A stretch of DNA of 64,000 nt from Convolutriloba macropyga (GCF_964194025.1 NC_134473.1:10726001-10790000); one strand, 5' to 3'. Counted from the first letter of the stretch, positions 2,128 to 56,200 are shown. Program-made: numbers and translations. Notes: a model not told the origin generated them from the sequence alone.

Positions 2128-2139
2128 AAACAGTAAATA

Positions 2140-4793: not shown

Positions 4794-5040
4794 GAGGAAT
4801 GAGAACACAGCTCAAATAGAAATATTACATCAGGGCGATTTCATTTGGTTCTTGAGTGACTGTGTGATGAACGTACTCTCTGGAGTTGTACCAATCAATA
4901 AAAATGAATTAAAAAATTTCGAGAAACCACTACGTAAACTTGCAGACAGGCGAGTTGAAAAAAGAGAGAATCAAAATTTTTCGATCAGATTCTGAAATCC
5001 GTCTAATTAAACTGATTGCGTTACCTTGTATTGCTTTTCT
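4771..5040 (+). pseudogene. Small conserved Maverick protein (NVLxGxVP family), frameshifted
   Basis: LSDCVMNVLSGVVPI...LRKLA resembles a recurrent Maverick small ORF; end coordinate approximate. Confidence 0.55.
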
Positions 5041-5048
5041 GGAGCAAA

Positions 5049-5760
5049 ATGCACACTGAAGAGTTTGTGCTATTTCCTCGTCAAATGTATGCGAATGAAC
5101 AACCTCAAATTGCTCAACTTCTCAACAATAAAAATGTCCGAGAGAAAGCAAAACAAATATCAGTGTTGCAAAGAAGCAAGTCTCCACCAGCACCTTCTAC
5201 CACGCAACAAGACACGCAACAGCAGACAGATAATATTTTGGAGAATGTCAAAGATGAGCTGAATGAGACTAGAGATGACAAAATTGATACAAAAGTTTCA
5301 ACTGAAATCAGGGAGCGAGTTTTGAGAGATATTAAACACTTTGACAGAAAAAGTTTGAAAAAGCGAGCATAATATTGGAAAAATAGAAGAGTCAGAAACT
5401 CTATCGTTGGATCAAACATCAAGACTAATGGTTAATAAGTCAAGAACGGGAGTTCTTGTCGCAGATTTTCTTTACGATCTACAACAAACCACATCTAAGC
5501 TTTCACTCGAACATTACAAAGTGCTGACCTTTCTAGATATCAGTTCACAATTAACTTGTAATACATACGCAAAAAAATTTCTTGCCTTATCACTAAACGA
5601 AAAGTTACAGTTGTTTGAGGATGAACCAGAAAACGAAGAATCAGGAGTCTCGAGAACAGAAGAATCAAAAGCTTCTGGCGACGATGAAAGAAGCTTTGAA
5701 GATGCAAAAGACGAAATCCAACCGTCTAGCTCGTGGACAAATTACTTCCTCTCACGTTAA
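5049..5760 (+). pseudogene. Maverick ORF upstream of the integrase, disrupted
   Basis: Two consecutive ORF fragments (EEFVLFP...; DFLYDLQ) occupying the usual pre-integrase position. Confidence 0.5.
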
Positions 5761-12225: not shown

Positions 12226-15200
12226 CTTTTCGGATGACGTTAGCATCGAGGAAACTCCTCCGTTAAATCAGTGTTACGCTCCAGTCAAGAAGGTGATCAA
12301 GTTATCTCGGCTCTAAACAAAACAAACTTTCGTCAAACTCATTGTACATATTGAACTTTTTATTTTTGGCTGATTACTGTGTTTCAACGTATGAACTTTG
12401 TGTTTACTTCTTTAAACTAGTTCTTAATTTAATTTTCACTAATGATTCATCTCAGCATCAAACATAGCATGAATGTTTGGAAGAAGGAATTAAGCGTTGC
12501 AGAAAAATTCAGACATTGAACAAACAAGTGGATGAAAGATTGTATTAAACAAATAAACAAAAGTAAAAAGGGTAGAATTAAAACCAGCTGAAGCTTGGGT
12601 ATTTTCATATCATGACAAAAAATCAGTAAACAATTTTCAGCAGATAATAGTACGCGATGCTAGTGATAAAACAAAACTGGGGTAAACAAATAACCCCGCC
12701 GACTGACCTACCTGCACTGAGCAAACAAAAAACAGGAAAGCAGGTAAACAGTTGAATCTCTGTTATTGGCACAACGGTCTGCGAGACTAGAGGCCCACTG
12801 TTTGCTCAGAAGTAGCTTTCAGTTGCAAATGTAAACAAAACGTTTGCCGAGCAGTAGCTTTCAGTTGCAAAAGTAAATAAACAATACGCGCACTCTGATT
12901 GGGTTAGAGAGTTGTGAAAATGTGTGACAACCCAATACTCAATTTTGTCATTTGCTTTTTGCCTTAACAAACACGCGACAACTATTTTCTTTAGCTTCTG
13001 ATTCAAATATCTAAAATGTTTTGAAAAGTCAGGCATTGTCCCAAAATTTTTAGCCTTTGGCTAGTTTTCTTTCCTTGTTCCACAAACGTTTAAGTTTGAA
13101 CTAACGAAAATGAATAGTGTCGATTGTAAAATCTGTCATCGAACGCTCTCGGATAAGCGCAGCCTAAGAAGACATATGAAAACTGTACACAAACAGTAAG
13201 CAGTAACAAATTCGTTCATTTGCGATGAATGCGGTTTCACAGATGAAAAAGTTGTCGAACTTGAAACCCACATGAGACAGCAACATGACTCAATCAGGCC
13301 CCGGTATTGCTTGTACTGCAACAAGTTTTTCGAAAACAATCTGAAGTATATGGAACATATGACCAAAACTCACGGACTTCCGGTGTGGGACGCAGAAATA
13401 GAAAACAACCAAAGTTCTGGTTTACTACCCTCAGAACAAGCATTCAGTGGAGTGCTGAAAACTTACGATATTCCGGTCGGTGCGAACGAGATTGATCTCC
13501 TGAGCTTCTTGCGTAGCAAGCGCACAGAAATAGACAACATCGTGGAATTCAACACTCAGAGTCACGCACAAAAAATTCAGTTTTGCGCCATGGTTCAACT
13601 CACTAAACCGTCGAGCAATAAAAACATAAATAGTCAACCAGATCGAATAAAAATTTACATAAACTCAAAAATGCAACGCGTAGATTTTGTCGGGTTGAAC
13701 AACAACTCATTCGCAGAAATGGTTGAGCAAATGTTGATCTCACTCAACAACTTTGCATCGCATGGGAGTGGATGGACCGTTGACAGCATTGAAAATGTTG
13801 AGATTCGTTTGATGAAGAAAACCGATTAGTGCTTCTTCCTATTTTGCCTTGCCCACTGAGCTAGCTAGATGTCAATACCTGCTGAATATCCGCAACCGAT
13901 CAGATGAAAATTGTTTCCTGTACTGTTTCACTGCTCAGTACCACAAAACATTTGGACCACCAATCGTACCCGAGAATGCGTCATGGAGGCAAAAAACAAA
14001 CCCCATCATGTACAGTCCCGACAACCCGGCAGCCAAACAACCAGTAGGCGAATTTCTAATGCCGATGTCTTTTCACCAATTCGAGAAGTTCGAGCAACTA
14101 AATCAGGTTCGTGTAAATGTTTTCAGACATTCAAACGGCAAACTGATACCGTTCCGTATATCAAAAAATCAGAAATCAGACTTCAACCTTGACTTACTTA
14201 TGCTAAGTGATGGATCGATGCATCACTATGTGCTAATTACCAACATCAAAGGATTAATACACAAATATAAAAAGATAAATCTCCGCAGGGACAACCAAAT
14301 CATCCGCAATCGAAGAACACAAACCCTGTAGCTATGCTTTGCTTTTTGTTGCACTCAATGAAGTCGAACCTTACTTCTTCGATATCAAAAGTGGGCCTAA
14401 TGTGATGTCCGAGTTCGTCAAGTTGCTTGAACAGATCGCAAAACAAATTTATGAAGTCAAGCAAAAACACCGAAACTTTGAAGGTGAGCCAACGATCCCC
14501 AAAGTCGAAGCAACTCATTGCTGGATCTGTTAGTCTGAATTAGATCAAAGCCCGCAAAACCCTACGGTGCTGGATCATTGCCACTTCACTGGAATGTTTC
14601 TTGGGTGGGCACATACTTTCTGCAATTTGAAGCGAAGAACAATAAATTTCACCCCCGTTTTCGCTCACAATTTAGCAAACTACGATCTTCATCATGTGGT
14701 GCTAGCACTACAAAGTTTGGATGAGAAGAACACAATTTCAATTGTTCCCAACACTAGTGAGAAATTTATTTCGTTGCAAATTGGTGTTTACATCAAGTCA
14801 ACTCAGAACAAAAAAGGCGTGTGGCACAACCAGTACGAATATATACGACTCCTGGACTCATTCAAATTAATGAATACATCGCTCGATAACTTAGTCCAAA
14901 ACTTGCCCTCAGACCAATTCACATTACCATTACTCGAACAATATTTCCAAACTTGGCCCGAATCATCCACTAAATTGTTAAAGCAGAAGGGATGCTTTCC
15001 TTACTGCTATATTGATAGCTTTGAAAAAGCTTTGGAAGAGAAACAGCTCCCCCCTCGGGAGAAATGGACAAACAGCTTGCAACAATTCGAAGTTACAGTT
15101 ACCGACGCTGAATATGCGCGGGCGATTGAGGTATTCAATTTGTTTCGATGCCAAAATATAGGAGAGTATTACAACCTGTATCTAAAAACAGATGGTTTTC

Positions 15201-16406
15201 TCCTAGCTGCTGTTGTGCTATGTTTCCGCAATGTATGTTACGAGACATACGGACTGGATTGTTGCCAGAATTACACCGCATCGAATTTGTCTGGTGACGC
15301 AATGCTTAGTTTGTCGACCAGATCTGAAACTCTTGACTGATCGCGAGCATCTGGACATAGTGGAGAGTCTCATACGAGGTGGAGTAAGCTGTGTTTACAG
15401 CAAACGTCTTTGTCGAGCAAATAATAAATTTCTTCCAGATTACAAACCAAAAGGAATTTCATCCTTCATAGTTATGATCGATGCTAATAATTTGGACGGT
15501 GGAATAATGGAAAAATTTCCACTTCCACTCGGGGACTTTGAATTGTTTGACAAAAGTGAGTGGACAGATAACGATGCCCAGGAAACACTGCAACGCATAT
15601 TAAAAACACCAGATGATGATGATACTGGCTTCATTGTAGAAGTAGGCTTCAGCTATCCTGATCATCTACATGATTTGCATTCAGATTTTCCTTTGGCACC
15701 AACCAAGGAAGCAATCGATGAAAGCTGGTTGAGCCAATACCAAAGCGATTTGTTAGATGAAATGCAAATAAAGAAGCCTCCAAAAGTCAAGAAACTAATT
15801 CAGACACTTTTCGACAAAAACAACTACACGCTGCATTACCAGACTCTGAAGCTCTATTTAGAATTGGTACTAGTCGTGACAAAACTGCAACGAATGCTAT
15901 CATTCAAACAAGACAAGTGGTTGGCTCCCTATGTACGACTCAACACAGACAAAAGAAAGCAGGCAAAAACCAAATTTGAGGAAGATTTTTTCAAATTAAT
16001 GGTCAATTCTTCTTTCGGAAAAACTTGCGAGGGAAAGCGAAACCGGATAAAAGTGAAACTGGCGCGCACTGAAGAAGAAACTCTTAAATGGACAGACAGA
16101 CCGGAGTATAAGTCATCGAAAATAATCAGCGAAGATCTAGTAACAGTGAGCCTTGAACAACTTGAAATTTTATGGGACAAGCCAACCATAGTAGGTGCAT
16201 GCATATTGGATCTGGCTAATAAATATATGTTTGAATTCCATTACAAAGTAATGAAGAGAAACTTCGACTGCAATTTGTTGTACTCGGACACAGACTCGTT
16301 TGTATATGAAGTTCGATCAAGAGATTTCTTCGCTGACTTACAGCGGAAAAAAGCCATAGCTGGCCACTTTGATTTTTCCAACTTCCCTCCCGAACATCCA
16401 CTGCAC

Positions 16407-17161
16407 GAAATTTTTTTTTGAATGTTTTGAATTTTATTTGAAAATTTTTTGAAATTTTTTTTCGAAAATTTTTTTTTGAAAATGTTTTTTTTGAAAAAAA
16501 TTATTGAATTTTTTGAAAAAAATTTTTTGAAATTTTTTTTTGAAATTTTCTTTGAATTTTTTTTTGAATGTTTTGAATTTTATTTGAAAATTTTTTGAAT
16601 TTTTTTTTCGAAAATTTTTTGAAAATGTTTTTGAAAAAAATTATTGAATTTTTTAAAAAAATTTTTTGAAAAATTTTTTTATTGAAATAACAATTTTTCA
16701 ATTTTTTTTGAAATTTTTTTTTTGAAAAAAATTTTTTTGAGACTTAAATTTAAAAACAATTTAAAATTTAAAAACAATTTGAAATTTTTTGAAAATTTTA
16801 TTTTTTTAATTTTGAAAAATTTTTTTATTGAAAAAACAATTTTTCAATTTTTGAAAATTTTTTTTGAAAAATTTTTTTAAATTTTTTGAATAATTTTAAA
16901 TTTTTTTTAAAAAATTTTTTTTTTGGAAATTTTTTTTTTAATTTTTTTTTTTTGAAAAATTTTTTTATTGAAAAAATTTTTCAATTTTTTTGAAATTTTT
17001 TTTGAAATTTTTTTGAAATTTTTTTTTTGAAAATTTTTTTGAAAAAACTTTTGAAATTTTTTGAAAAAAAATTTTGAAATTTTGAAAAAATTTGAACATT
17101 TTTTTGAAAAATTTAAAACAATTTGAAATTTTTTTTTTGAAAAAACAAATTTTCATTTCAG
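16407..17161 (+). repeat. Copy of the A/T intron satellite lacking its donor site
   Basis: Same TTTTTGAAAAA units and same acceptor; 112 nt of exon plus the donor are absent. Confidence 0.85.
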
Positions 17162-26399: not shown

Positions 26400-27735
26400 T
26401 TAATTTTGATCGCAAAATTACGCTGTTTTCTCAAGTTCAACTGTCCTATCCTAACATATATGTACACGAAGTGCTCTACCGCACATTTTCAAAACACTCT
26501 TTCGGTAACTGTCGCAACTTTTTATATCCTTTTGGGCATTACTTTTGTCATCTTCACCTAATTCTTATCTTGATTTTTTGCAAAGTTGCTGTTATTTTCT
26601 CCTTTAAGGTCGGGGTTGATGTAAAAAGCTTTCTTTTGGCCGGCAGATAGAATAATTCTTCAATTGAAGCCGTGGTACTTAATCTTGATTAGATTTATAA
26701 TGTGCTCGCACACCGTAGTCTAGGTAATATCTGCTCAATAAATTTATCAATTTAAAATCAAATAGAGTCAATTTAAGCCGAAACATGCGAGGCTAATAAA
26801 ATTCACCTGTGAAGCCTTTCTAAAACTTTGCAGGCAGTCAGAATTTGTGCGAGATCACAAAAACATACACCTCGTGGTACGTACGAAGTAACAGAAAGAC
26901 TGATCCTTCTACTATTTCGGCAACCAATACCAGAAGGCGACGGTACATGCGCACAAAAACCTTGTTTTTACAAAAGTTTTCAGTGACGCAGAGAGCAAAT
27001 CTGTACCAAGCGGGAGCGCGTTCAGATTCCCACGTACTGAAGTAACAACCTTTCCTTCCAGAAGGCGAAGAAAATGCAACAACCAACTGTTTGATCTGTG
27101 AAATTCCACGCAGTTTTTTACCGAGTATATAAAGACAACGCTGTTTTGAACTTCTAATTCTGATCACAGTACACAGAGTTCGCTCGCACTTTAATTCTTC
27201 CCGTTAAAATTTCCTCAACGTTTTGTAATACTACCAACATTTTACCCCCAAATGCTTGTGTAAACTTGTATAATTACCTAGAAACCTCTGGTTCCACAGT
27301 TTAACAGCCTTCCGTTATTGTTTTAACACAATGAATAACAGTTTTTAAGTAGATGTAGATTTATCTTTTTTTTGCATTTTAATGCATCATATTGTCCAAA
27401 ATTTACCGTTTTGATCGCAAAACACACAATTTTTTTAAGATTAAATGTCCTATCTGAACATATATGCATATTAATTGCTTTACCGCACTTTTTCAAAGCA
27501 TTTTTTTTGGGATTATCGCATTATTTTATCATTTTACGCATTACTTTTGTCAATTTTACAAACATTTTGTATTCATTTAGTACAAACTTGCTTTTCTTTT
27601 CTCATTTATGGCTGACTTCGACTTTAAAAGCAATCTTTTTGGCTAGCAGATACAATAATTCTCCAGGTGGAGCCTTGGTGTTTAATTTTTATTTGATTTG
27701 TAATCTGCGCGCATCCACTGATCTGGATAACATAT
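26400..27735 (-). repeat. Inverted copies of the same repeat family (continues at 33262-33420)
   Basis: Reverse complement of 27281-27310 is AGGCTGTTAAACTGTGGAACCAGAGGTTTC; 33262-33400 matches the reverse complement of ~505-645. Confidence 0.75.
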
Positions 27736-28074
27736 TATGATAACTTTCTTCTTAGTTTGCTTATGCCTTTTCTATCTTTTTAGAGGCGGCTGTGTAGGTG
27801 CTAGTGCCAAGTGCTATATTGTATGATGACAGAGTTATCGTTGCAATATCCTTTCTAATAAAGGCTTTTAATTGTAAGTTTTTGCTAAATGCTATTCGGA
27901 GCGCGGGTGCGGTAAAAACGCTCTTTTTCTGCTACAAGTTTTACATTCAAGTATTTTGGTAAGCAACTGAACTGTTCTGAGCAGAATCGTCTGTCTGAAT
28001 TGCAAGATAATAAGTGCGTGCTGTATAAATTTACAAAAGTCTTTTTCAACCAATCAAAATTCAGCATCGTCATA
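27736..28074 (-). repeat. 3' LTR (TATGA...TCATA)
   Basis: About 13 substitutions versus the other LTR by manual comparison. Confidence 0.92.
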
Positions 28075-28309
28075 TTACGGCTCTTTAGAAAAAGCGGAGG
28101 CGATGGGTTTCGAACCTTTAATCTTATGATTATAAACAGGGTTGCCTAGTGTGCTGTGCCAAGTGGGTCTTGATTAGTGGTGTTGACAAAGTCAGGGGAT
28201 TTACTGGGCTAATTAATTATAAATGGAAAGCAACATTAATAGTGGTTTTTTCTAAGTTTTTATTGAGTATTCTAGATCAAAATGCTGGAAGTTTATTTTC
28301 TGTTTGCTC

Positions 28310-28857
28310 TATTTGGCCTCTTGTTTTCTCATCTGATGTATGCGAAGAAATTGAACTGGTGAACGCGACTGCTGTATGTTCTGAAAAAATACTACATTCC
28401 GCGTTGGCCAAGTGGATGTGAGTTTCGTGCCATATCGGAGCCATATTTGTCCAGTTGGTGATGGTGGGATTGAAGATTTGTGTCCTCGATTCTTCCAAGT
28501 TTTGCAATGATGTTCGTGTTGGTCGTGGCAGGCATAGTACGCATGCAGTAGAAAAGGCGTGCAGTTTTGTAGAAAAATAGATTAGAAGTTTCTAATGACA
28601 TAGTGATGAGGCTGGATGTGTAGATTGAGGGCCTCCTGACCGCCCACAACTCTCCTTAGGTGAGGCATGAGTGTGCTTCTTCTCGGTATCAGGGCTGTCT
28701 TCCTCAGAACGTCGAAGTTCGTGGGCTCGCCCTGCCAAACGTAGGTGATTTGCACGTAAGTGCGGTAAATTGGTGTCTCCTGTATGCCCACTTTGATTAG
28801 CAGGGCGGGCCTGCCGTCGAATGAGAAGTGTTGTGGGGGGTCAGGCTGATAATTCAT
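28310..28857 (-). pseudogene. Unknown cargo ORF of the LTR element, one internal stop at 28582
   Basis: The frame stays open about 90 more codons after the stop and includes a His/Cys cluster; end approximate. Confidence 0.4.
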
Positions 28858-29400
28858 TAGTTGATGTGCTGACGTGTTCTTCGCTGTTGAAACTGGGACT
28901 GAATAGATAGTGATGAATATTTTCTATTTTTGCTGAGTGAGGTTAAAGTGTGAGGCCGTTCATTAGATTTGTATCAGTGTGACAGTTGTTTGATAATCTC
29001 TTCGGGTTTATTTGCATTTTTCCCAGAAAGATTAATGTAGTAGTAATCTGTCAAGTGGCAGTTCCATTTGCTCCATGTTGTGAGGGGAGTGAAGTAATAA
29101 AGTAATTCCCTCGGCATGGCAGTAAATGGCAGTCACTAATGGAGTTTTCGGAAGTAATTCCCTCGGCATGGCAGTAACTGACAGTCACTAATGGAAGTTT
29201 TGGAGGAGAGTAAATTGAGAACAGTGTGACTGACTGCTCTTTTGATAAAGTTATTCAGAATACGTTTACTGCGAAGAGGTCAAATTTTAATAGCGGCGTT
29301 ATTCATCGACTGTTGGATATTTTATCGAAGCGTTACAAAAAACGATTAATTGTAATAACGAAGAGACGGGATATTCTATTTTATCAAAGTATGGACACTA

Positions 29401-30591
29401 AAAGGTTCGTTAATTACTTATAAGAATTTAGGATTTGATAGGCTGGCATTAATATTTTTTGTAGTTTTAAGCAGAATTATCGTGTTTAGAACGACACGAG
29501 GCAGACAAGATTTGCTAATCGAAATGAACGAGTTCAAACATCAGTACTACGATTGGAAAAAATTAATAAGTCTCGGATGGAAAGAAGTGGAGACAGTCGA
29601 CGGGCGGGGTATTAATTGTTGGAACTCCTTAAAGAATAAGTTAACTATAGACGGTAAAGGGAGAGTGGTTGGAGAGAATGGTTGGCCGAAGGTACCATTG
29701 GCAATAAATAATGAAAATATTGTGGGATTACAAGAAAGTTTAATAGAAGGGTTCCGAGGCTGTAAAGATCAGGGTGATGTGTATAATTATGCTAGTAAAT
29801 TAAATTTGGAGAATGGTGATAACAGGTTGTATTAAGAAGTTGGGTCGTATGCTGGTTTGTGTAATTCAATAGGTTGGACGTTTTGTGTGGATGGTTTGAT
29901 GATTGGTGTTTTGCCTGATGGTTTTACTGGTGTAAGGAGAGATGCAATGGTACAATAGAATGAGTGGTGGACGGCGGCACATGTTGAGATTGGGGGGAAT
30001 GATAGTGTTTCGAAAACGCCGTGTGGTGAAAAATTGATTCTGATTTGTGGAAGTTATCAGACATCAAGGGATTTTAATAATGTTATGGGTACTCCGCAAT
30101 ATTTTATGGATTTAATTAAGAGGGGTCCTTCTGCAGGTGGTTTGGAAAAGGATGTTTGGTTTTTCATTCCGACGAAAGATAATGTAATGTGCCAGCCTTC
30201 GTTGTGTGCGCATGCTGTTTTAACTTTTACAAGAGGCTTGTCGTTAGTGACTGGCTGGGAGGCGCGTGATCAATCGAATCAAGTTGTCGATCGGACTTTG
30301 GGATCGTTTGCTTATGGTGTTCGTAAAGGGGTGGTGAAAAGAATTGTAATATCAAATAACAAAAAGGCAGTGTTAGACTGGGCGAAAGAAAGAGAAGTAT
30401 CAACTGGCGGTGGTAGTGATGTGACTGAGCATGTGCAGAGTTTCTTTAATAGTGGTATAATTTTAAAAATATATAACAAACGAGGTAATCGAAGAAAATG
30501 GGGTGGGAAACGGGAAACGAAAACGCAGTCGAACGACAACGAGAATATTGTGTATTCGTTTCTTCCTCCAAAGGATCCTTCAATGGAGTAA
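29401..30591 (+). pseudogene. JmjC-like 2OG/Fe(II) dioxygenase, in-frame stops at 29833 and 29956; 5' end uncertain
   Basis: WWTAAHVE (HxE), GEKLILI, QPSLCAHAVLT (distal His) and SLVTGW, all in one frame. Confidence 0.7.
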
Positions 30592-31182
30592 GTGAGTTGT
30601 TCAACTTTTGTTTATTGAGAATTTTGTAGGGTTGGAACTATACTGCCAGGTTTTTTTTTTACTTTTTTTGAGATTTTGTTGTTTCGTGTCCGTGCCCTTT
30701 CAAAGTATGTTGAAAGGATTGTTTTTGGTTGATACTGAGCAATCGGTAAGGGTCCTGTCTGTGTTATTTTGGTTTTGTTCTGGAGAAAAAATTGATGTTT
30801 CGTGAGTTTTTTATCGTTATTTTGCAGAGTCGTATGTAGTGTAAGCAATTATTATTTTGACTTTCAATCGCGTGCCCTTCGAAGTGATAAGAAGGTGGGA
30901 GGTTAAATTTTGCTGGTAATGGTTGGAAATAGTTTGTTTAATAATAGTTTGCTATGTTAGTGGTGCTCGCGCATTGTGCTCACGAGTTATGACGAGTAAT
31001 TTTTTTTGGTTCAGAAGTAAAATTAAATTGGTAAGAAATTGAAAATAAGAAGAGGAGGCGTTACATTTGAATAATTTGCGGTGTTTATAAAATAAGTATT
31101 TCATGAAAATAATTGCGACTCATGAGAAAAAAAGAATAAAAAAATTATTTTGGATAAAAAAATTTAAAAAATTTATTCAAGT

Positions 31183-31530
31183 CTAAGTGAATACACCGAT
31201 GCCAACAGGGTCAAACTCAATGGGGTCGTGAATGTCCATTTGAATAAAATCCCAGAATTGGTGGTTCAGTTGGGTACCTTGGGATGAAGTAATGAAGTGG
31301 TATACGTAGGTGTAATATTCCCAGGTTGTGTAGAAAAAACATTTTTTCGTGAAAAGGCCTGTATGGGAGTGTGCCCAGATCACGATGGTTCCATTTTGTA
31401 ATATTACATATTCATTGAAAAAACATTCCCTGTATTGGATCCGACTTCCACCCAAACGTTGATGTTGTGGTTGGTGTGTAATTTTGGGGCGATGTCTTCT
31501 GGGCCGACGTAGTTCCGGATTTGGTCCCAA
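31183..31530 (-). CDS. Unknown cargo ORF
   Basis: 115-aa ORF in a co-directional series; start uncertain. Confidence 0.4.
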   Translation of the reverse strand: MGPNPELRRPRRHRPKITHQPQHQRLGGSRIQYRECFFNEYVILQNGTIVIWAHSHTGLFTKKCFFYTTWEYYTYVYHFITSSQGTQLNHQFWDFIQMDIHDPIEFDPVGIGVFT

Positions 31531-31637
31531 ATGCTTGTAGTCATGGTTTTTAGGAAAATTAAAATTGATGAGGTGCTAGATTTTAAGATTTGGAAATATC
31601 AGGGAAAGAATAAGTAAATATGGTTTTGAAAAAGAAA

Positions 31638-31946
31638 TTACAGGTCAAATTCGCCTTCTAAAAGTTCTTCTTTGATATTTTGTAAGAAATTCAAAAAGGT
31701 AAGAAAATTTGGATGATCTGGTTCCAAAGTGATTTTTTTGTCTTGATTATTATCCAGGAAGTTAATCCAGAAGCATAATGTATTGCAGGGGAATATGAAG
31801 TTTTCAGAAAAAACTGCAAGTTTTATATCAAAATCAGTGAGAAAGTAAGCATAAAGTGGAAATTGGGTTGGAATTGGAGATATGTAAGGAAGGGTGTCTT
31901 CTGATTGGTCAATTGTGGTGAAAGTTGGGGTTGGTGGATAAGACAT
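31638..31946 (-). CDS. Unknown cargo ORF
   Basis: 102-aa ATG-initiated ORF. Confidence 0.45.
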   Translation of the reverse strand: MSYPPTPTFTTIDQSEDTLPYISPIPTQFPLYAYFLTDFDIKLAVFSENFIFPCNTLCFWINFLDNNQDKKITLEPDHPNFLTFLNFLQNIKEELLEGEFDL

Positions 31947-31992
31947 GAGACAAAAATTTTAATAGAATATGAATGCAAATATTTGAGGAAAT

Positions 31993-32382
31993 TTACATAG
32001 AGTCATCTGAGAATGGAATGGGTGATGTAGGAGAAATTGGAATATAATTTAATTCGGCTGAATTGTGGTCTGATGTAGGGTCAGGGCTTTCGGGACCTTC
32101 AGAAATTGTTGGTTGCGATGGTTCTATTGCAACTGGTTCTCCTTCTGAGTTAAGATAGAAATTCACATTACTATAATTATTTGTGGATTGTATGCATTCT
32201 AGAAATGTTTGCCATACGGCTGATGTATCATTCACTGTAAGGGGGATAAAGGAAATTGAATAAATATTGCTGATAATATTGTCCTGTTGCATGTTAATAC
32301 TAATTATTGCTTCACGATCTGTAAAAAATGCAATGCTGTATTCAGTAGTATAAGCTGGCTGGCCGTTGAATGCGCGGCTCAA
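31993..32382 (-). CDS. Unknown cargo ORF with Pro/Ser-rich tail
   Basis: 129-aa ORF; start uncertain. Confidence 0.4.
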   Translation of the reverse strand: MSRAFNGQPAYTTEYSIAFFTDREAIISINMQQDNIISNIYSISFIPLTVNDTSAVWQTFLECIQSTNNYSNVNFYLNSEGEPVAIEPSQPTISEGPESPDPTSDHNSAELNYIPISPTSPIPFSDDSM

Positions 32383-32904
32383 CTTTAATTCTGAAGTGAT
32401 ATACTGGATTCATTATAAAATGAAATAATGCAAAAGGTAAAATTTTAGTTGTAGGAAAATTGTTTAAGTCGTTTGAAATGATTTCCAAGTTTCTATCCGC
32501 GAAGAACTTGTAATAGGTTTAGAGAGTGAACAGTTAGCAATAAAGAGAGTTGCCGGTAATTAGCAGGCAGAAAGTAGTTTGAATGATTGATAGTGTTGCG
32601 GGGGGAGTGGGGGAAATTTGACATTTTGATTAATTGGGATTGTGGGGAATTATCCCTGGTTGGGTTGATTAGTATTTCATTATAGGATGTCATTGTGATT
32701 GATGGACAGTTCGCCTTCCAGGTTAATGGATTTCCTTCTTTTTCTCACTTTGACAGATAATTGATAAGTTTCCTTTGGGAGTTGTATCTTATTACTCCGT
32801 TGTTTAATGCGTCAGTATAAATTCTTTTTAAAAATAAATTCGTCGCTGGATAAAAAGGTAGGGAGCAAATCCCCGCCTTTATCAATGGAGGTTTAATTCT
32901 CTTT

Positions 32905-32922
32905 ATCCCATCTCTTTCGCCA
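32905..32922 (-). promoter_or_regulatory. Primer-binding site (tRNA 3' end, Ser-like)
   Basis: TGGCGAAAGAGATGGGAT immediately internal to the LTR. Confidence 0.75.
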
Positions 32923-33261
32923 TATGATAACTCTCTTCTTAGTTTGCTTATACCTTTTCTATCTTTTTAGAGGCGGCTGTGTAGGTGCTAGTGCCAAGTG
33001 CTATATTGTATGATGACAGAGTAATCGTTGCAATATCCTTTCTAATAAAGGCTTTTAATTGCAAGTTTTTGCTAAGTGCTATTCGGAGCGCGGGTGCGGT
33101 AAAAACGCTCTTTTTCTGCTATAAATTTTAAATTCAAGTATTTTGGTAAGCAGCTGAACTGTACTGAGCAGAATCGTCTGTCTGAATTTCAAGGTAATAA
33201 GTGCGTGCTGTATAAATTTACAAAAGTCTTTTTCAACCAATCAAAATTCAGCTTCGTCATA
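32923..33261 (-). repeat. 5' LTR (TATGA...TCATA)
   Basis: Direct repeat of 27736-28074. Confidence 0.92.
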
Positions 33262-35113
33262 GATATGTTCAAGAAAACTATCAAATTAAGAATGCTCGTG
33301 GATAAAAGCCTACGAAAATTGAGTGCAATTCTTTTCACTGTCGAAATTAAGCATTTTCTTGCCACTTTCTTCATCAAACCACTTAGTTTTGAAATTTCAA
33401 ATATCTGTTCTAAAAGGTTTTGAGTGATTCAGACTTGGAGTTTCTTACGGGTTTAATGTGAATCCGAAAATATAAAAAAGTGGGTCAGACATTTTGACGT
33501 AATACTAAAAATAATAGAGGATTTGAGTAGACGATAGAATTATACCGTTTATATCGACTGTACATAGTCTAGCTGAAGATAGTTTGCTGATGGATGTATT
33601 TGGCCGTGCTCTTTGTGTGTTTCAGTGTTGTACACAAATTACAATTATTACTGTTGTACTTTGGCAATGAATAAACCATATCAATGTTGTGAACTATTTA
33701 TTCGCTTCTTCTATTCCAAATCCAGTCAAATATTTATTACCAGTCTCAAATTGATTGACAGTTTGAATATTGTAAAACGGTACCTGGTATGAATTTATCT
33801 ATTTCTACTCACTTGCAGTATTTGTTGATTAAATGTTTGTGCCGGCTGCCACCGTCTATTTTGTTTTTACGAAAGCATCCCTGGGCGCTGTTTTATATTT
33901 CATACAATATTTCAATTCTCAGTTATATTTTTAAATTGAATGATGAGCTTAGTTTGGATTGTATTTTTAATTTGATGAAATGAGAAGGTTATAGTAATTC
34001 AAAATAGTGATTTACTTTTTCTTCTGCAACCAATTGATTACTGCAAAACGTTTTGAAACGTTTTTTTAGGGGGAGGGGGATGATGGGGGTATGCGTTTTG
34101 TTTATTGCTGGTACAACATAAAATGGTAAATTTCATTTCAAATCGTGGCCTTCAAGTGACAAAAATGCATCCATTCAGGTTTTCATAGTCGCACATTCAT
34201 AGATTTTATTGCCAACTTCACGAAACCATCTTTGGCTAAAGGTCACAAATGCGTAGCTTAGCGTATGTTGGACTGGATGGATTATAGTTATCGTTTTTGT
34301 TGCTTCCGAGGTTACTTCAATTTTTGCTGGCATTAATAACTGTCAGGTTGCCAAATTTTTTTTGCCAGATATTTGAAACTGTTTTGAGTGCAATTATTTG
34401 GTTAGGCTACTTGAAAAAAATGCTCTAGGCTGCTATCAAAAAAATTTAGAGTAGCGTCCTTTTTCACCAACAAAGATCCTCATCACTAACGGCTCTTCAA
34501 CAATTTGTGCTCTCAAAATTTTTTGCCGCAATTTTTGTCCTAAAGAAATGAAAATATCGACATATTTTTCAATTGAAAAATTGATTAAATCACTAAATGA
34601 CAATGTAATTTCCTGTAAAGCTAAAAATGCCCCATGTAATGTTATGGCTGACGGAAAGAAAAATTGTGCACAATTTTTCAGCATTATAATCTCTAAATTG
34701 TATTACAAAAATCGACAGTTATCTGGCCTAACTCAGTTTCTATTACAAATTAACACCAACTAGATTTTTTTAATGCAGAATAAATTGCAATCACGTGATT
34801 GAAGTACTAAATTTAATTATATTTGTAGATTTTGCAACGCGCTTTGAAAAGCATCCCCATCACTGCAACAGCGGATTTGCTCGTGAATGCTATTGGTGAG
34901 GTTAGAGGGGCACGCAGAATACGCAGCTGTTTCGAATATCAATTTACTGTTGTCTGATTATGGGTGGCAAATATACGTAGTAAATCAGCTCATATAAATA
35001 GTGTAAATTACCCGCCAAAGCTTGATCTGGATGTGTGAAATTAGCTCGGAAGTTAGCGCATTTGCTTTCTCTCTTTTAACTTTCGGAGTCATGCTGAAAC
35101 CCCTCCTTTCGAG

Positions 35114-50248: not shown

Positions 50249-53200
50249 TCAGAATTGTTGTTGAGGTTCTTGAATCTTATCACAGATTTTCTCAGCCATC
50301 ATTGTACAAACAGAAACCAAGGGTCCACTGGGTGCATCTGGGATAATTGAACTATCCACTACCCTCAAATTACCAACACCCCATACTCGACCCTGGTTAT
50401 CAGTGACCGCCATGGAATCGGAATAGCTTCCCATTTTACACGTGCCAGAGTAATATCCGTGTGATCCCACCATTTCTCTCACAAAGCCTTCCAGCTCCTG
50501 TTCCGATCGGACATGAGGAGGAGGAAGAACTACTGTTTGAACATCATCTGAGAGAGCTTCGTGTTCGAAGATCTGCCGGACAACCTTGAAAATTGTTGCG
50601 TTAAAATTCTAGTTGCCGTTGGGGGGATAGCTTCATTGACTGAATTAATAAAATTCTTGGGCCTGGATTCCTACTAAAGTCGAAAAAAGTTTTTTCATGG
50701 GTACAGCATAATTTGTTCGTAAAATATTCTTCTTTGCGGTTCTGGAAAGTTTTTTTTGCGGGATGGGATAATCGGTGAAACCTCAATTAGGCAAAAATGT
50801 TTTTTGTAGTCAATGGGCAAAAATTTTTAAATGAAGTTTTAAGTCGAATGGTTAACTTGTAACAACTTGCAAGTCACATGGTATACTTGTAAGAACTTGC
50901 AAGTCGAATAGCTAACTTGTAAGTTTCTTGCAAGTTAGATCCGGTTGAGCTCGACTCTTAATGGTTAATTTAATTTAACACTCAGTCATTTAACTTAAAA
51001 AGCACGTGAGAGTTAGTTGCTCAATTTGGAAAACATATTACAATGCAACCAAAGTCGATAAAACGTTTACTTCTCAATTTTATCAACTCGAGAGGTCCTT
51101 TTGCAGTTCAATTAATGAACAGTAGGTCTCAATTGGCTTCTTCAGGATTGCTTTTTTAAAAATGTTTCTACAATTTTATACCCCTTTTTGACTTTAATTG
51201 ATGTTTCAAGTTCATATGTCAGCATCTTCGCAAAATACTTCAGCGAATTTTTATTTTTTTAACAATTTTTTATGATTGCAATTCACACCTTTCCAGGATC
51301 TATATTTATGAAGCATCTGCTTACAATCATATCTTTCGACGTTTTTTTTTAAATTTTTTGTGCTACAATATAGACTGAAATGTTATCTGATAACAACTTA
51401 TATTCAAAAAACTTATGTTAAAAATTATGTAAGTCAAATCTTTAACTAGTACGAACCCTGCGATTTGAATGGGTATCTTTCAAGAGCCTTTTATGTCGAA
51501 TGGTTAATTTGTAAGAGCCTTGTAGGTCGAATAATTAACTTGTAAGAACTTGTAAGTCAAACGGTTAACTTGTAAGAACTTGCAAGTTTTTGGAAGAAAA
51601 ATTTGCCAGGCGATGCATCGCCTTGTAAATTTTTGTTCAAAATTTGCAAGTGCTTACAAGTTAACCATTCGGCTCGACCCGGGCATGTAAAATGTACTAC
51701 TTCTTTCCAAACTGTTTCATCATTTCAGCCCTCGTTATTATTCGGGCAAAAGAAATTGGCAAAAAATGCGAGGAAAGATTGGAGAACGTATCGAAAAAAA
51801 TTCACGCATTTGTTATGAAAAGTTCTGAGAAAAGTTTTGCTATAAATGCTTGATCTTAACTGAAAATCCGCAGACCTCAAAATATATTTTTAAAATTGTA
51901 ACTGTTTTTGTAAGCTATTATCATCCAGAGACAATTGTTAGGGACACTTGAGTGCTTTATAGCGTCAAGTGGGTTTGAAGTACCGGTTTTATTTTTTTTG
52001 AAATTGTAATTCGCCTAATGTCCACAAAACAAGGTGGGCTGCGATGCTTAAAGTATCTTTGTCGGCTTTTGTACGTACCTTCACACCCTCAATGGCATTC
52101 TGCACATCCCTGTTGTCACTGAACATGTCATAGTCTACGAGAGGTTCGTCTTTAAAATCACTGCTCTGGAGTGTCACAGATCCTCGGCTGAAAACCTGAG
52201 CGTTGGAAACAGCACACATGTATCCAGGCGTCTCTGAGTGATCTCTCTGGAACAGGTTTCCTCCAGGGAAGGGTCCATAGAGAGAATCCACAAACATGAA
52301 GTTGGCATTTGGTCGATCCAGCTGAACATTTTCAATATCGTAAATCTAGACTTTTGACTGCATTTTTTTGAAATCTGACTTAAATTTTATCGTTGACTGG
52401 TTAGATTAATTCAAGCTTCCATTAATACTTTTAAAATCCAAAGTCTCATCAAATCCTTCTTGTGTTCTCGAGCAAATTTATCAGATCGAAGTCCAAGAAA
52501 TCTGTCCTCGCAAAACCATGGAAAAAGTAACCATGAAAAACTAATAGTACCAAAAAATGAGGATAAAAGAAAGCTGGTCAAATTTTCAATAGACGCTTTC
52601 AAGATACTTCCAATTTTTTTCAAAATTTTCATCTCAGTTTTCAGTCATTTTAATTGTCTACATAATCTTTAATTTCGTTTCCCATCATTTTTCGTTTCTC
52701 TTTTTTATTTTATTCTGAAGCTGAACATATAGACTATCAAAGAGTTCCTTTAGTGTTGACAATAATGACATAACAGAAATAAGTTTAAAAGTTTTGTAAA
52801 TTACGATATTGATCAATTTTTCTCCCACTCAATTGAGTGCTAGTCAGTGACAGTTTTGGGAAATATGTAGTGCATTTATGTGAAGTTTGAATTATTAAAA
52901 CCAGCATTTCAAAAAAGGAAATAAAACTACTTGACTTTTGCTTTAGTTTTATTTTTTCTTGAACTTTGCTTCAAACACCTTCGCATTTATTCAATCTTCT
53001 GAAGTGTTTCAGAGTTCAATCAAAAGCACATACTGTTGAACGATTTCATATGCTTCTTTAGAAATCTGATTGAGAAAAAATTTTAAAAGCAACACCTAAC
53101 TATTATTATTATTTTCATCAAGCTTCTGTTCTGATTGNNNNNNNNNNNNNNNNNNNNNNNNNNNNNNNNNNNNNNNNNNNNNNNNNNNNNNNNNNNNNNN

Positions 53201-56200
53201 NNNNNNNNNNNNNNNNNNNNNNNNNNNNNNNNNNNNNNNNNNNNNNNNNNNNNNNNNNNNNNNNNNNNNNNNNNNNNNNNNNNNNNNNNNNNNNNNNNNN
53301 NNNNNNNNNNNNNNNNNNNNNNNNNNNNNNNNNNNAAATTAATAAATATGGTTAGGTGTTGCTATTAAAATTTTTCTGAATCGAATNNNNNNNNNNNNNN
53401 NNNNNNNNNNNNNNNNNNNNNNNNNNNNNNNNNNNNNNNNNNNNNNNNNNNNNNNNNNNNNNNNNNNNNNNNNNNNNNNNNNNNNNNNNNNNNNNNNNNN
53501 NNNNNNNNNNNNNNNNNNNNNNNNNNNNNNNNNNNNNNNNNNNNNNNNNNNNNTTTGTTGAGTCCTTGAATGCAGTCACGGAGCTTTTTTGTTCAAATTA
53601 TTCTTAAAAGGCTTTTTGTGTGATGTTTTGCTCCAACTTTTTATCACTGAACTGTTGCGTTTTTGAATGAAAACTGACTGGACCCTGTCTTTACGTGAGG
53701 ATATACATTAGTGAACTTTTTTCTGCCCTGGTGGCGAGTTTTTGAAGGTAGTTCCTAACAAAGCAAAACCAATCTAAAAAAAGGAAAATTGTGTTCCAGT
53801 TTTTTTTCGGATTCTGTGCAAAACAGTCATCAAACTCTTTTCAAATTTCAAACTGATATTCAAGCAGACAGAACAACTTAAACTGCTTCAAAATTTTTAA
53901 ATTCTTTCAATTAAATCCTATAGGTTGATCCGATTATTTATTTGTTCTTTTTACCGAATGTCTAAATATATATCAGTTTAGAGCTAAATTGGTGTCAAGT
54001 AGAAATAACAGTTTTACCGAAGTCATGCCAGCTCTTATGCGGTTTTGATTTTTTCTGGTCAAAAATCAGTGGAAAAAGATGAATTGCTCAGACAAATTGT
54101 GATTGCAGAAATTTTAATCAAAATTAAAAATCAGAAGTTCTTTCCTTTCTGGCAGACACGGTTTAAAAGTGGCAATTTCTTACATCTTTGGTTTAAGCTG
54201 TTGAAACTAAAAAATAATGTTCAGTGTTACTTCCTCTTGCCTGTACTCGTTTATTTAATGTAAACTGCTATATTTAAGACTCATTTCGTTTTGTATGGTA
54301 AATTGATTTGTGAAGGTTATGAACTTGACGCGTAGAATGCAGTAAGAAATCATTTCATATACTTTTGTAAAAAAATTCTTAATTTATTACTAAATTTGAT
54401 TGGAACTTGCCTTTTTGTCGGTTTTAATAATTGCTGCAACGTCGAGGCCGAGTGACGTATGAGGTCCCGTGTGATTCACGAACCAATCACGTTGTGCCAT
54501 TTCCTTCTTGTTGTTCGGATACATGCCATAGTAGTAATTGTCTGATTTGTTTACACATGCAACTGGGACTAATATTGGTGCCTGGATAAAACTACTCATT
54601 GATTAGTTTTTACTATGGGATCAAAATTTTATTTCCGTAAATACCCAAGTCTGAGATTTTGGCCTTACNNNNNNNNNNNNNNNNNNNNNNNNNNNNNNNN
54701 NNNNNNNNNNNNNNNNNNNNNNNNNNNNNNNNNNNNNNNNNNNNNNNNNNNNNNNNNNNNNNNNNNNNNNNNNNNNNNNNNNNNNNNNNNNNNNNNNNNN
54801 NNNNNNNNNNNNNNNNNNNNNNNNNNNNNNNNNNNNNNNNNNNNNNNNNNNNNNNNNNNNNNNNNNNNAGTTTAGATGTAAGGTTTTTCGTTTTAATATT
54901 AAAAAAGAGAGATATCATTTGAACAAGGTTACTTATTAGAAAAATAAATTTAAGTGGACAATTTGGAAAGTTCGAGGATTGTTTTACAAAATCAGAGAAT
55001 AAAATAGTTATCTTTGGTCAAAATATTTTTTCCTCGAACTTCTTATAAGGGCGTCTATTGGCAAAAAATTTTTGCAATTGAGAAAGAGAACCAGATACAC
55101 GTAGAAAAAATCTCGGCTGGTCTGACTATATTTATGTATAAAGATTTACTACTTTGAAACTTGCAGAAAATTTTCAAATTTTAAATATGATAAATTTTAT
55201 AAATCATTTTCTCTTGATTAGCTATAATTTTTTTTACTCAAGCGTTATTATTTTAAAATTGTATGTAACTTCAGTCAATCGAGAGCAACGTTACGCATTT
55301 GTGCATGGATAAAAGAGCTACGTTTTTGGAGGTGGTATTAGAAACTTACGAACATTCTGTTTTTGTTGACAGAGATGTCTCATTTTTGTTACAAAGTTCT
55401 CTTGAAAGCAGGAACTGAAATTTTTTTATATTTTTATTGTTTTTGAAAAATATTTAATGGCTCAGAGCAATATTGAAAAAAAAGATCGTTCCATGAAAAG
55501 AAAGTCAGACATCATTGATTTAGTTTTGTATTATATTCATTATTCCTTTAAGTATATTTATTTTTTTTTCAACAATACTATCATTCAGATACTCAAATCT
55601 TCTTCCAATCTATTGCTATCATAAATATGTTCCAAACAATTACTAACTTTTCACTACAAAAATTTTGTTAGTGTTCTTACCCAAAGCAGTTAAAGCGCAA
55701 GGATCTTACGGGTGCTTATTGTTTTCTTGGGTTAAACCTGCGCCTCTAACAGAGCAACAAACGTATTGTGGTCAGAAGACATTTGATATTTTAGTAAGCC
55801 ATTATTAATATTTAAAGAAAAACAGTTGTTCTTCTATTAGGATGATATTAAGAATTGAATTAAGTAGCAAATGTCCTCTTAGAATTTCCTCCAAATTAAA
55901 TTTATCTTGAACTTGTCAAAAAAATTTCGCTGAAATACTCTAACAAGAACACATATCAATGATTTGTCGAAATTTACAATCAATTAAAAATGTAACAATG
56001 CTAGAGAAATATCATTTTTAACATTTGTGTTTATATTAGAAATGCAAAAATTTGAGAAGCGATAAAGAAAAAATGCTAATTGCTAAATGAGTTTATCCAA
56101 AAAAAACTGATCATCAAAAACGATCCCATACGAGTTTATAGAGATAAATAGCTAATGTCCAAAAATTTTGAATCGTAGTTTTTTTTAGTGTTTCTTTTGT

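What the first reader, a model, noticed from the sequence alone, without database searches (positions are those of the whole stretch)
27736..33261. Gene-dense non-autonomous LTR element with several orphan ORFs
Seen: 339-bp LTRs about 96% identical, a tRNA PBS and a 5-bp TSD, but no gag, PR, RT, RH or INT motifs. The 4.85-kb interior is packed with short ORFs: minus-strand 32382-31993, 31946-31638, 31530-31183, ~29117-28860 and 28857-~28310, plus the plus-strand JmjC-like gene. Inference: an accessory-gene module mobilised in trans, or the accessory half of a large or bipartite retroelement, rather than a simple TRIM/LARD.
Basis: partly seen in the sequence, partly recalled or inferred. Interest (0 to 1): 0.75.

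Follow-up and report, generated by a model that had tools for sequence, protein, structure and literature searches.

The report
Deleted copy of giant Gypsy retroelement
This is a dead, internally deleted copy of a 15-kb retrovirus-like mobile element of the acoel worm Convolutriloba macropyga. It lost gag, pol and the env-like gene but kept the family's conserved accessory genes, including an opposite-strand gene for a histone-demethylase-like (JmjC) enzyme.

Summary
The LTR pair (339 bp, 13 differences), the 5-bp target duplication (4/5) and the lack of gag/pol are real.

The same LTR bounds about 80 elements, many about 15 kb long. These carry a gag-sized ORF (no family match), pol (RT, RNase H, integrase) and an env-like ORF on the window's minus strand. 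The window copy keeps only the last 4.8 kb before the sense 3' LTR.

Its deletion junction is unique in the genome, so it is not an amplified non-autonomous family. The deletion starts right after an 18-nt PBS that copies the primer tRNA. Normal copies match only 14 nt. Only 5 of 83 copies have this form, and all three I could check are deleted. The loss therefore most likely arose during reverse transcription.

The interior is a real accessory module. Four small sense ORFs and a 381-aa antisense gene are open in tens of copies. A sister family keeps four of these five genes, three of them placed in the same order, at 26-55% identity. The antisense protein models as a JmjC oxygenase (Z 15.5 to KDM7/PHF8/KDM2) with its metal-binding residues conserved. 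In the window copy that gene and ORF B carry stop codons.

This scan has already reported antisense JmjC genes in other retroelements of this genome.

The parts
27731..27735 (.). Left copy of the target-site duplication (CATAT)
   Evidence: It matches GATAT at 33262-33266 in 4 of 5 bases. Three full-length copies have perfect 5-bp duplications and a fourth has one mismatch.
27736..28074 (-). LTR; this is the 3' LTR in the element's true (minus-strand) orientation
   Evidence: It is 339 bp with termini TATGA...TCATA and differs from the other LTR at 13 of 339 positions. The genome search scored 40 near-full LTR matches out of 289 candidates.
28089..28116 (-). tRNA-like 3' half (T-loop, T-stem and acceptor strand) followed by TTTTT, about 15 nt upstream of the 3' LTR.
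   Evidence: It is nearly invariant in seven copies that are otherwise 3-11% diverged. ARAGORN and Rfam call no tRNA here. Its function is unknown.
28582..28857 (-). Accessory ORF E (91 aa), intact here. It lies in a 450-nt cassette (28559-29008) that exists as two deeply diverged alleles.
   Evidence: about 50 open copies at 86-91% identity, plus about 28 open 115-aa frames at 33% identity in the same position; pN/pS 0.15 against 1.5-1.8 in the off frames; the cassette is 54-60% identical in DNA between alleles while its flanks are over 92% identical.
29100..29203 (.). Two tandem 52-bp repeats between ORF E and the antisense gene
   Evidence: They are also present in the full-length copies. 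Their role is unknown; a promoter or enhancer for the antisense gene is a guess.
29452..30588 (+). Antisense JmjC-type 2-oxoglutarate/Fe(II) oxygenase gene, 381 aa in open copies. Here it is 91% identical with two in-frame stops (TAA at 29833, TAG near 29956).
   Evidence: at least 25 open copies, plus a sister family at 51-55% identity with open 448-aa frames; language-model neighbours are JmjC/cupin clusters; model pLDDT 87.7; Z 15.5 with rmsd 3.9 A over 258 residues to KDM7A, and similar scores for PHF2, PHF8 and KDM2A. H177, E179, K194 and H254 are kept in 91-95% of 68 relatives.
31183..31530 (-). Accessory ORF D (124-aa frame in most copies). In the window copy the first 29 or so residues follow another frame.
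   Evidence: tens of open copies at 90-92% identity over residues 30-115, and relatives at 36-47% elsewhere; pN/pS 0.24-0.30.
31638..31946 (-). Accessory ORF C (102 aa), intact here
   Evidence: about 50 open copies at 90-96% identity, and more than 40 open 133-aa frames at 36-40% identity in a sister family; pN/pS 0.18.
31993..32463 (-). Accessory ORF B (161-codon frame in other copies).
   Evidence: about 50 open 161-aa copies at 94-99% identity. The window copy is 82% identical with two stops. Sister-family relatives are 26-34% identical and sit next to the C-like ORF.
32897..32904 (-). Deletion junction: about 8 nt of filler between the tRNA-copied PBS and the point where homology to full-length copies resumes
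   Evidence: About 9.65 kb of the full element is missing (the gag-sized ORF, pol, the env-like ORF); the junction is unique in the genome.
32905..32922 (-). True primer-binding site. On the minus strand it reads TGGCGAAAGAGATGGGAT, an 18-nt copy of the primer tRNA's 3' end with one later substitution.
   Evidence: A tandem array of tRNA-like genes ends in GGTTCGAATCCCATCTCTGTCG (51 exact hits, 0 in the control). Normal copies match only 14 nt (...GATG|TTGA).
32923..33261 (-). LTR; this is the 5' LTR in the true orientation
33262..33266 (.). Right copy of the target-site duplication (GATAT)

Best explanation
Window 27736-33261 is one old, defective copy of a roughly 15-kb Ty3/Gypsy-type retrovirus-like element of Convolutriloba macropyga. 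Its genes read on the window's minus strand.

Full-length layout (sense strand): LTR, PBS, a gag-sized ORF with no family match, pol (RT, RNase H, integrase), an env-like ORF, small ORFs B, C and D, an antisense JmjC oxygenase gene, 52-bp repeats, ORF E, a tRNA-like piece, LTR.

The window copy lacks about 9.65 kb, from just after the PBS to the end of the env-like region. It therefore consists of the two LTRs, the PBS and the 3' accessory module.

The deletion was most probably made during reverse transcription (inferred). The plus-strand strong-stop DNA ends in an 18-nt copy of the primer tRNA. I infer that it was extended from an internal site of the minus strand, or from a prematurely ended minus strand, instead of from the PBS complement. 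Minus-strand synthesis starts at the 3' end, so such accidents keep the 3' accessory part and lose gag, pol and env.

The copy was then integrated with a normal 5-bp duplication. It has decayed since: LTR divergence is 3.9%, and the JmjC gene and ORF B carry stops. I found no sign that it was ever copied again.

The accessory genes are real genes of the family. The JmjC enzyme is predicted to be catalytically competent. My best guess (inferred, not shown) is that it removes repressive lysine methylation from chromatin on or near the element. The roles of B, C, D and E are unknown.
For: Structure of the family:
- LTR pairs about 15 kb apart lie at many loci.
- The window copy aligns to positions 200-5403 and 15048-15399 of the full copies.
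- Pol carries RVT_1, RT_RNaseH, Integrase_H2C2 and rve on the minus strand.
- The sense strand is A-rich (35.5%) and G-poor (15.4%) along the whole 15 kb.

This copy:
- The junction is unique in the genome.
- TSDs follow the 5-bp rule.

PBS signature:
- Normal copies read TGGCGACAGAGATG|TTGA.
- The primer tRNA-like genes end in ...GAATCCCATCTCTGTCG. The expected 18-nt tRNA copy is therefore TGGCGACAGAGATGGGAT, stopping before A58.
- The window copy and the L036 copy carry exactly this sequence, followed directly by internal sequence. L036 shares GGAT as microhomology with its internal site.
- Genome-wide, 5 copies have the 18-nt form and 78 have the 14-nt form.
- By its coordinates, a third 18-nt copy (C12:53528969) keeps only about 1.77 kb more than the window copy.
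- That makes 3 of 3 checked 18-nt copies deleted, against 0 of 16 readable 14-nt copies.

Accessory genes:
- Tens of open copies exist for each gene. For B, C, D and the JmjC gene there are more distant relatives at 26-55% identity, and the JmjC-, C- and B-like genes sit in the same order and spacing in a sister family. For E the distant relative is its second allele within this family.
- pN/pS is 0.15-0.5 in frame and about 1 or more out of frame.
- JmjC fold and catalytic residues.
Against: - No RNA data could be laid. The four runs found behave like genomic DNA contigs. Transcription, strand and splicing of the accessory genes are therefore unshown.
- The junction in the window copy has about 8 nt of unexplained filler, so its exact break point is uncertain within about 12 nt.
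- The JmjC protein has no Pfam or PDB match by sequence. Its fold assignment rests on a predicted model.
- No gag or protease family match was obtained, even in full copies.
- Only 40 of 316 candidates were scored in the junction search.
Confidence: 0.8

Rival explanations
1. It is a non-autonomous LTR element family (an accessory-gene module) that is mobilised in trans by the 15-kb partners.
For: It keeps both LTRs, a PBS and the sequence next to the 3' LTR, so in principle it could be copied in trans. Autonomous partners with the same LTR exist.
Against: Its junction occurs once in the genome. The other deleted copies have different end points. Its LTRs are about ten times more diverged than those of the young copies. 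Its JmjC gene and ORF B are broken.
Confidence: 0.05
2. A full-length copy inserted normally, and the 9.65 kb was lost later by a chromosomal deletion (end joining or replication slippage).
For: Internal deletions of old insertions are common, and the junction has a few filler bases of the kind end joining leaves.
Against: The deletion begins exactly after an 18-nt tRNA-templated PBS. Its last four bases (GGAT) are absent from all 16 readable normal copies. The same boundary recurs in independent deleted copies with different far ends.
Confidence: 0.1
3. It is a reverse-transcribed copy of a spliced subgenomic mRNA for the accessory genes.
For: Retroviruses and some Gypsy elements express downstream genes from spliced RNAs whose donor lies just after the PBS. 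Such RNAs can be copied into DNA.
Against: Neither the window copy nor L036 has GT...AG at its boundaries. Splicing cannot create the tRNA-derived GGAT. The 3' break points differ between copies and are not at ORF starts.
Confidence: 0.04

Closest known systems
Envelope-carrying Ty3/Gypsy elements of animals (errantivirus-like; PMC13524379) and rotifer LTR elements with extra ORFs (PMC5408684)
   Same: LTRs, a tRNA-complementary PBS, pol in the order RT, RNase H, integrase, an env-like ORF after pol, and further ORFs captured downstream.
   Different: The region between pol and the 3' LTR is about 8 kb. It holds at least five conserved extra genes, one of them antisense. The env-like ORF has only a weak language-model lead to class I F-type fusion proteins. 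PMC13524379 does not mention acoels.
Plant Retand/Tat lineage Gypsy elements (Grande, RIRE2, Retand; PMC11963269)
   Same: A long region between pol and the 3' LTR, with conserved antisense ORFs and tandem repeat arrays.
   Different: That lineage is in plants and its antisense protein carries the TRP28 domain. No such domain was found here. Here the antisense protein is a JmjC-fold enzyme. The resemblance is in architecture only, not in membership.
Orchid Ty3/Gypsy elements with an ALKB m6A-demethylase domain (PMC9289625)
   Same: An LTR retroelement that carries an Fe(II)/2-oxoglutarate dioxygenase as conserved cargo.
   Different: It is a different branch of the dioxygenase superfamily (AlkB against JmjC). 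I did not read that paper's body, so I have not compared gene placement or strand.
KDM7 / PHF8 / PHF2 / KDM2 JmjC histone lysine demethylases
   Same: Best structural matches of the antisense protein (Z 14-15.5 over 240-270 residues). The HxE...H metal triad and a lysine at the 2-oxoglutarate position are conserved.
   Different: Only 11-15% sequence identity. No PHD, CXXC or F-box partner domains. No Pfam JmjC match. Substrate unknown.
Antisense genes of complex retroviruses (HTLV-1 HBZ, as cited in PMC11963269)
   Same: A protein gene on the strand opposite gag-pol, near the 3' LTR. A TATAAA that points antisense lies in the LTR (28026-28031).
   Different: HBZ is a bZIP regulator, not an enzyme. 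Antisense transcription was not shown here.

Membership tests
Ty3/Gypsy (Metaviridae) LTR retroelement | Direct LTRs flanked by a short target-site duplication | tested here: met
   339-bp LTRs. The 5-bp duplication matches 4/5 here and is perfect in three full copies, with one mismatch in a fourth.
Ty3/Gypsy (Metaviridae) LTR retroelement | PBS complementary to the 3' end of a host tRNA, directly after the 5' LTR | tested here: met
   On the minus strand, 32922-32905 matches the 3' end (plus CCA) of tRNA-like genes in an array on C10.
Ty3/Gypsy (Metaviridae) LTR retroelement | pol with domain order RT, RNase H, integrase | tested here: met
   Met in the full-length copies of the family. Absent from the window copy, which is deleted.
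Ty3/Gypsy (Metaviridae) LTR retroelement | Recognisable gag and aspartic protease | tested here: inconclusive
   ORFs of fitting size and position exist (347 aa; 132 and 139 aa) but have no Pfam match.
Non-autonomous LTR families (TRIM / LARD type) | No gag-pol coding capacity | tested here: met
Non-autonomous LTR families (TRIM / LARD type) | Several copies share the same internal structure, so the deleted form itself has been amplified | tested here: not met
   The junction is unique. Other deleted copies differ in their end points.
JmjC-domain Fe(II)/2-oxoglutarate oxygenases | Double-stranded beta-helix (JmjC) fold | tested here: met
   On a predicted model (pLDDT 87.7), the top Foldseek hits are all JmjC proteins. 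Z is 15.5 with rmsd 3.9 A over 258 residues.
JmjC-domain Fe(II)/2-oxoglutarate oxygenases | HxD/E...H metal triad and a 2-oxoglutarate-binding Lys | tested here: met
   H177 in 61 of 67, E179 in 62 of 67, K194 in 62 of 67 and H254 in 53 of 56 relatives. I did not check residue by residue that these positions overlay the triad of a solved structure.
JmjC-domain Fe(II)/2-oxoglutarate oxygenases | Match to the Pfam JmjC / Cupin_8 sequence models | tested here: not met
   No match for this protein or for ten relatives. No sequence match in the PDB.
JmjC-domain Fe(II)/2-oxoglutarate oxygenases | Hydroxylase or demethylase activity | not testable with these tools
   Needs an enzyme assay.
Retand-type Gypsy elements with antisense ORF | Antisense ORF with the TRP28 (PF04195) domain | tested here: not met
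   No such match. The likeness is in layout only.

The most novel reading that the evidence does not exclude
Acoel Gypsy-type retroelements form a 'complex retrovirus-like' lineage. They carry their own antisense JmjC demethylase to erase repressive histone methylation on their own chromatin. They also carry a conserved set of small regulatory proteins, one of which (E) is kept as two ancient alleles that are swapped between elements by recombination.
Probability: 0.3. Interest if true: 0.8.

Novelty: new variant of a known kind. Interest (0 to 1): 0.5.

Why it matters
The window copy itself is an ordinary dead insertion, but it is informative in two ways.

First, it shows how such 'gag/pol-less, gene-dense' elements arise in this genome. 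The tRNA-copied PBS at the break marks an accident of plus-strand transfer during reverse transcription. Such an accident keeps the 3' accessory half of the element. This warns against reading such copies as separate non-autonomous families.

Second, it exposes the accessory module of a recently active 15-kb element family. At least five conserved extra genes lie there, one of them a predicted active JmjC oxygenase on the opposite strand. In my searches I found no paper describing a JmjC enzyme as retroelement cargo. The closest cases are an AlkB domain in orchid Gypsy elements and the antisense TRP28 ORFs of plant Retand elements.

If the enzyme acts on chromatin, it would be a transposon-encoded counter to host silencing in an animal. 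That idea can be tested directly.

Other reports of this scan have already noted antisense JmjC genes in other retroelement families of the same genome. The point is therefore not new within the scan. This family adds an intron-less version and the linked small genes.

Tried and rejected
- RNA evidence: the one run search found four runs of unknown kind. Laid on the element, they behave like fragmented genomic DNA contigs at repeat depth, so they say nothing on expression or strand.
The sister family is therefore known only from coordinates and identities in search tables.
- The first structure model, built from six close sequences, was useless (pLDDT 32). The second, built from 68 relatives, worked.
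- Pfam found nothing at curated cut-offs for B, C, D, E, the gag-sized ORF, the env-like ORF or the JmjC protein. The weak Baculo_19 hit of ORF D (E 0.06) is taken as chance.
- ARAGORN and Rfam found no tRNA in the element.
- I considered that the filler at the junction came from further read-through of the tRNA or from elsewhere in the element. Neither fits.
- I considered a splicing origin and rejected it: there are no GT-AG ends and splicing cannot create GGAT.
- ORFs at 29117-28860, 28581-28310 and 32693-32493 show pN/pS of about 1 or more.
- Sense-strand frames that overlap the antisense gene show low pN/pS. I take this as an echo of the constraint on the antisense gene.
- BLASTP between the small ORFs gave only a weak C-to-D hint (E 0.011).
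- align_proteins printed a consensus line of the JmjC protein on its own. I did not use or copy it. I built no consensus of the element and single out no copy as the best preserved.


Full report
**What is at the coordinates.** The repeat search finds two direct repeats at 27736-28035 and 32923-33222. Read in full, they are 339-bp LTRs at 27736-28074 and 32923-33261 with 13 differences (K2P 0.039). They begin with TATGA and end with TCATA. The five bases outside them are CATAT and GATAT. Four full-length relatives follow the same 5-bp rule: three have perfect duplications (AACAC, CATGC, AGAAG) and one has a single mismatch. None of the interior ORFs matches a gag, protease, RT, RNase H or integrase family.

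**The element is one copy of a much larger family, read the other way round.** The genome is 1,175,981,408 bases. This equals the published Convolutriloba macropyga assembly of 1,175.98 Mb (PMC13650328), so the host is this acoel worm. The LTR has 289 candidate matches in the genome, and all 40 that were scored are near full length. Many lie in pairs about 15 kb apart.
- I fetched four such elements completely and several in part.
- The window copy aligns to positions 200-5403 and 15048-15399 of these, so about 9.65 kb is missing from it.
- The missing part holds a 347-aa gag-sized ORF. It also holds a pol of about 1,290 aa with RVT_1, RT_RNaseH, Integrase_H2C2 and rve in Ty3/Gypsy order, and a roughly 600-aa ORF with an N-terminal hydrophobic segment. 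All lie on the window's minus strand.
- For the 600-aa ORF, the protein language-model search gives only a weak lead to class I viral fusion proteins.
- The strong G-over-C excess of the window's plus strand belongs to a uniform composition of the whole 15-kb sense strand: A 35.5%, G 15.4%.

The true orientation is therefore minus. The left LTR is the 3' LTR, and the retained 4.8 kb is the last third of the element.

**The PBS.** In the sense orientation the 5' LTR is followed at once by TGGCGACAGAGATG in 16 readable normal copies, and then by the leader TTGAACGC....
- The genome has a tandem array of tRNA-like genes (C10, 2.70-2.80 Mb) that end in GGTTCGAATCCCATCTCTGTCG. There are 51 exact matches and none in the control.
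- With CCA added, their last 14 nt pair with the PBS.
On the sense strand it reads as the T-loop, T-stem and acceptor strand of a tRNA followed by TTTTT, about 15 nt before the 3' LTR, and it lacks the TGG of a PBS.
- That sequence is almost invariant in seven copies. Neither ARAGORN nor Rfam calls it a tRNA. Its role is unexplained.

**How the deletion arose.** In the window copy the PBS reads TGGCGAAAGAGATGGGAT and is followed, after about 8 nt of filler, by internal sequence. A second deleted copy (L036, on C2) reads TGGCGACAGAGATGGGAT and is followed directly by a different internal site that itself begins with GGAT.
- The extra GGAT is absent from normal copies. It is exactly what the tRNA provides: the 18 nt from A59 to the CCA end, which is the stretch reverse transcriptase copies into plus-strand strong-stop DNA before it stops at position 58 (established retroviral mechanism; the tRNA sequence is).
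- Genome-wide, only 5 copies have the LTR followed by this 18-nt form, against 78 with the 14-nt form.
- A third 18-nt copy (C12:53528969) lies only about 1.77 kb beyond the point where the window copy breaks, instead of 9.65 kb. It is therefore also deleted, with yet another end point.
- So 3 of 3 checked copies with the 18-nt form are deleted, against 0 of 16 readable copies with the 14-nt form.

I infer that these copies were born deleted. The plus-strand strong-stop DNA was extended from an internal place of the minus strand, or from an unfinished minus strand, instead of from the PBS complement. In L036 four bases of microhomology helped. Minus-strand synthesis starts at the 3' end, which explains why the accessory half survives and gag-pol-env is lost. 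The window's junction occurs only once in the genome, so I found no sign that this copy was later mobilised. Its LTR divergence (0.039) is about ten times that of the full-length copies I read (0 to 0.006). Overall it is about 93% identical to them, while they are about 97% identical to each other.

**Are the interior ORFs genes?** I searched the whole genome with each protein.
- **ORF C (31946-31638):** about 50 open copies at 90-96% identity, and more than 40 open 133-aa frames at 36-40% in another repeat family.
- **ORF B:** a 161-codon open frame in about 50 copies, with 26-34% relatives next to the C-like ORFs. The window copy has two stops.
- **ORF D:** a 124-aa frame in most copies, with 36-47% relatives elsewhere. 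The window copy differs in frame over the first 29 or so residues.
- **ORF E (28857-28582):** open in about 50 copies.
- **The plus-strand ORF:** open at 381-410 aa in at least 25 copies, and at 51-55% identity with open 448-aa frames in the sister family. In the window copy it is 91% identical with one TAG and one TAA.

In the sister family the JmjC-like, C-like and B-like genes keep the same order, strands and spacing. On C9, for example, they lie at 8854273-8855409 (+), 8856464-8856766 (-) and 8856822-8857244 (-). The gaps are 1,055 and 56 nt, against 1,050 and 47 nt here.

Between the window copy and the young copies, pN/pS in frame is 0.18 (C), 0.24 (D), 0.15 (E), about 0.5 (B) and 0.53 (antisense gene). 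It is about 1 or more in the shifted frames. By contrast, 29117-28860, the stretch below 28582 and 32693-32493 show no such signal.

**The antisense protein.** It has no Pfam match and no sequence match in the PDB. The language-model search puts it among JmjC/cupin clusters (0.96).
- A profile search of 1.84 billion representatives finds 187 relatives. Ten that I sampled also lack Pfam JmjC matches.
- With 68 of these as alignment, AlphaFold2 gives a confident model (pLDDT 87.7, pTM 0.84).
- Foldseek's top hits are all JmjC oxygenases. The second-look aligner gives Z 15.5 with rmsd 3.9 A over 258 residues to C. elegans KDM7A, and Z 14-15 to PHF2, PHF8, KIAA1718 and KDM2A.
- H177, E179, K194 and H254 are kept in 91-95% of relatives. 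This is the HxE...H metal triad plus a lysine at the usual distance for 2-oxoglutarate binding.

It is thus a predicted active JmjC-type oxygenase. Its substrate is unknown. A role against chromatin silencing is my inference, drawn from its nearest structural neighbours.

**Other features.**
- ORF E lies in a 450-nt cassette (28559-29008) with two alleles that are only 54-60% identical in DNA and 33% in protein. The elements carrying them are otherwise 92-97% identical, and both old and young copies carry each allele.
- Two 52-bp repeats lie between E and the antisense gene.
- The LTR carries a TATAAA that points in the antisense direction (28026-28031). It is a candidate promoter for the antisense gene, untested.
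- B, C, D and E have no predicted membrane segments, and their isoelectric points range from 4.5 to 10.2.

**Comparison with what is known.**
- Extra ORFs in animal LTR elements are described for bdelloid rotifers (PMC5408684).
- Env-carrying Gypsy elements are described across animals, although acoels are not mentioned (PMC13524379).
- Long pol-to-3'-LTR regions with antisense ORFs and repeat arrays are typical of plant Retand elements, which carry a TRP28 protein (PMC11963269).
- An AlkB dioxygenase domain was reported in orchid Gypsy elements (PMC9289625).
- My searches found no paper on a JmjC gene as retroelement cargo.
- Other reports of this scan have already noted antisense JmjC genes in other retroelement families of this same genome, some with introns. 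Here the gene is a single open frame.

**Limits.**
- No RNA evidence was available.

**Verdict.** This is a single defective copy, most likely deleted during reverse transcription, of a recently active 15-kb Gypsy-type element. What it preserves is the family's real accessory gene module.

Noticed in passing
window 28559-29008 (ORF E cassette); L034 and L036 carry the other allele: Two deeply diverged alleles of ORF E (33% aa, 54-60% nt) sit at the same place in elements that are otherwise 92-97% identical. Both old and young copies carry each allele, with about 50 and about 28 open frames genome-wide. This looks like a swapped or diversifying cassette.
   Followed up: partly
window 28089-28116 (minus strand): A tRNA-like 3' half followed by TTTTT lies about 15 nt upstream of the sense 3' LTR. 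It is nearly invariant in seven copies. It is not the PBS and its function is unknown.
   Followed up: partly
G000:C10:2701271-2802371: A tandem array of dozens of tRNA-like genes ends in GGTTCGAATCCCATCTCTGTCG, with spacing of about 300-600 bp. They are the likely primers of this retroelement family. I did not identify the anticodon.
   Followed up: partly
G000:C12:2296550-2305106 and G000:C4:49834678-49840008: Some copies of the family carry three or four tandem duplications of the B-C-D gene block, with periods of about 1.15 and 1.35 kb.
   Followed up: no
L039 / L006 (G000:C13:27576472 copy): A young 15-kb copy (LTR K2P 0.003, perfect TSD) lacks the PBS and about 75 nt of leader. Its 5' LTR is joined directly to ...TAACGGAAAAACTTAC. 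This is another replication-linked defect of a different kind.
   Followed up: no
L035 (G000:C9:35517567-35521644): A 3.7-kb LTR-to-LTR unit of the same family keeps part of the gag-side region and about 2.2 kb of unrelated sequence. A PBS follows its last LTR, so it is probably part of a tandem or nested array.
   Followed up: no
window 28026-28031 and 33213-33218 (plus strand): TATAAA, and AATAAA at 27858, in the LTR point antisense to gag-pol. They are a candidate antisense promoter for the JmjC gene, as in HTLV-1 HBZ. Not tested.
   Followed up: no
window 26519-26730 and 27521-27733: The left flank of the insertion holds two 71-74% identical segments spaced 1 kb apart. The element may have landed in an older repeat.
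   Followed up: no
window 1001-2000, 16001-17000, 53001-54000: Three 1-kb bins have only about 20-22% G+C. They may be very AT-rich DNA, or runs of N if N counts in the total. I did not look at them.
   Followed up: no
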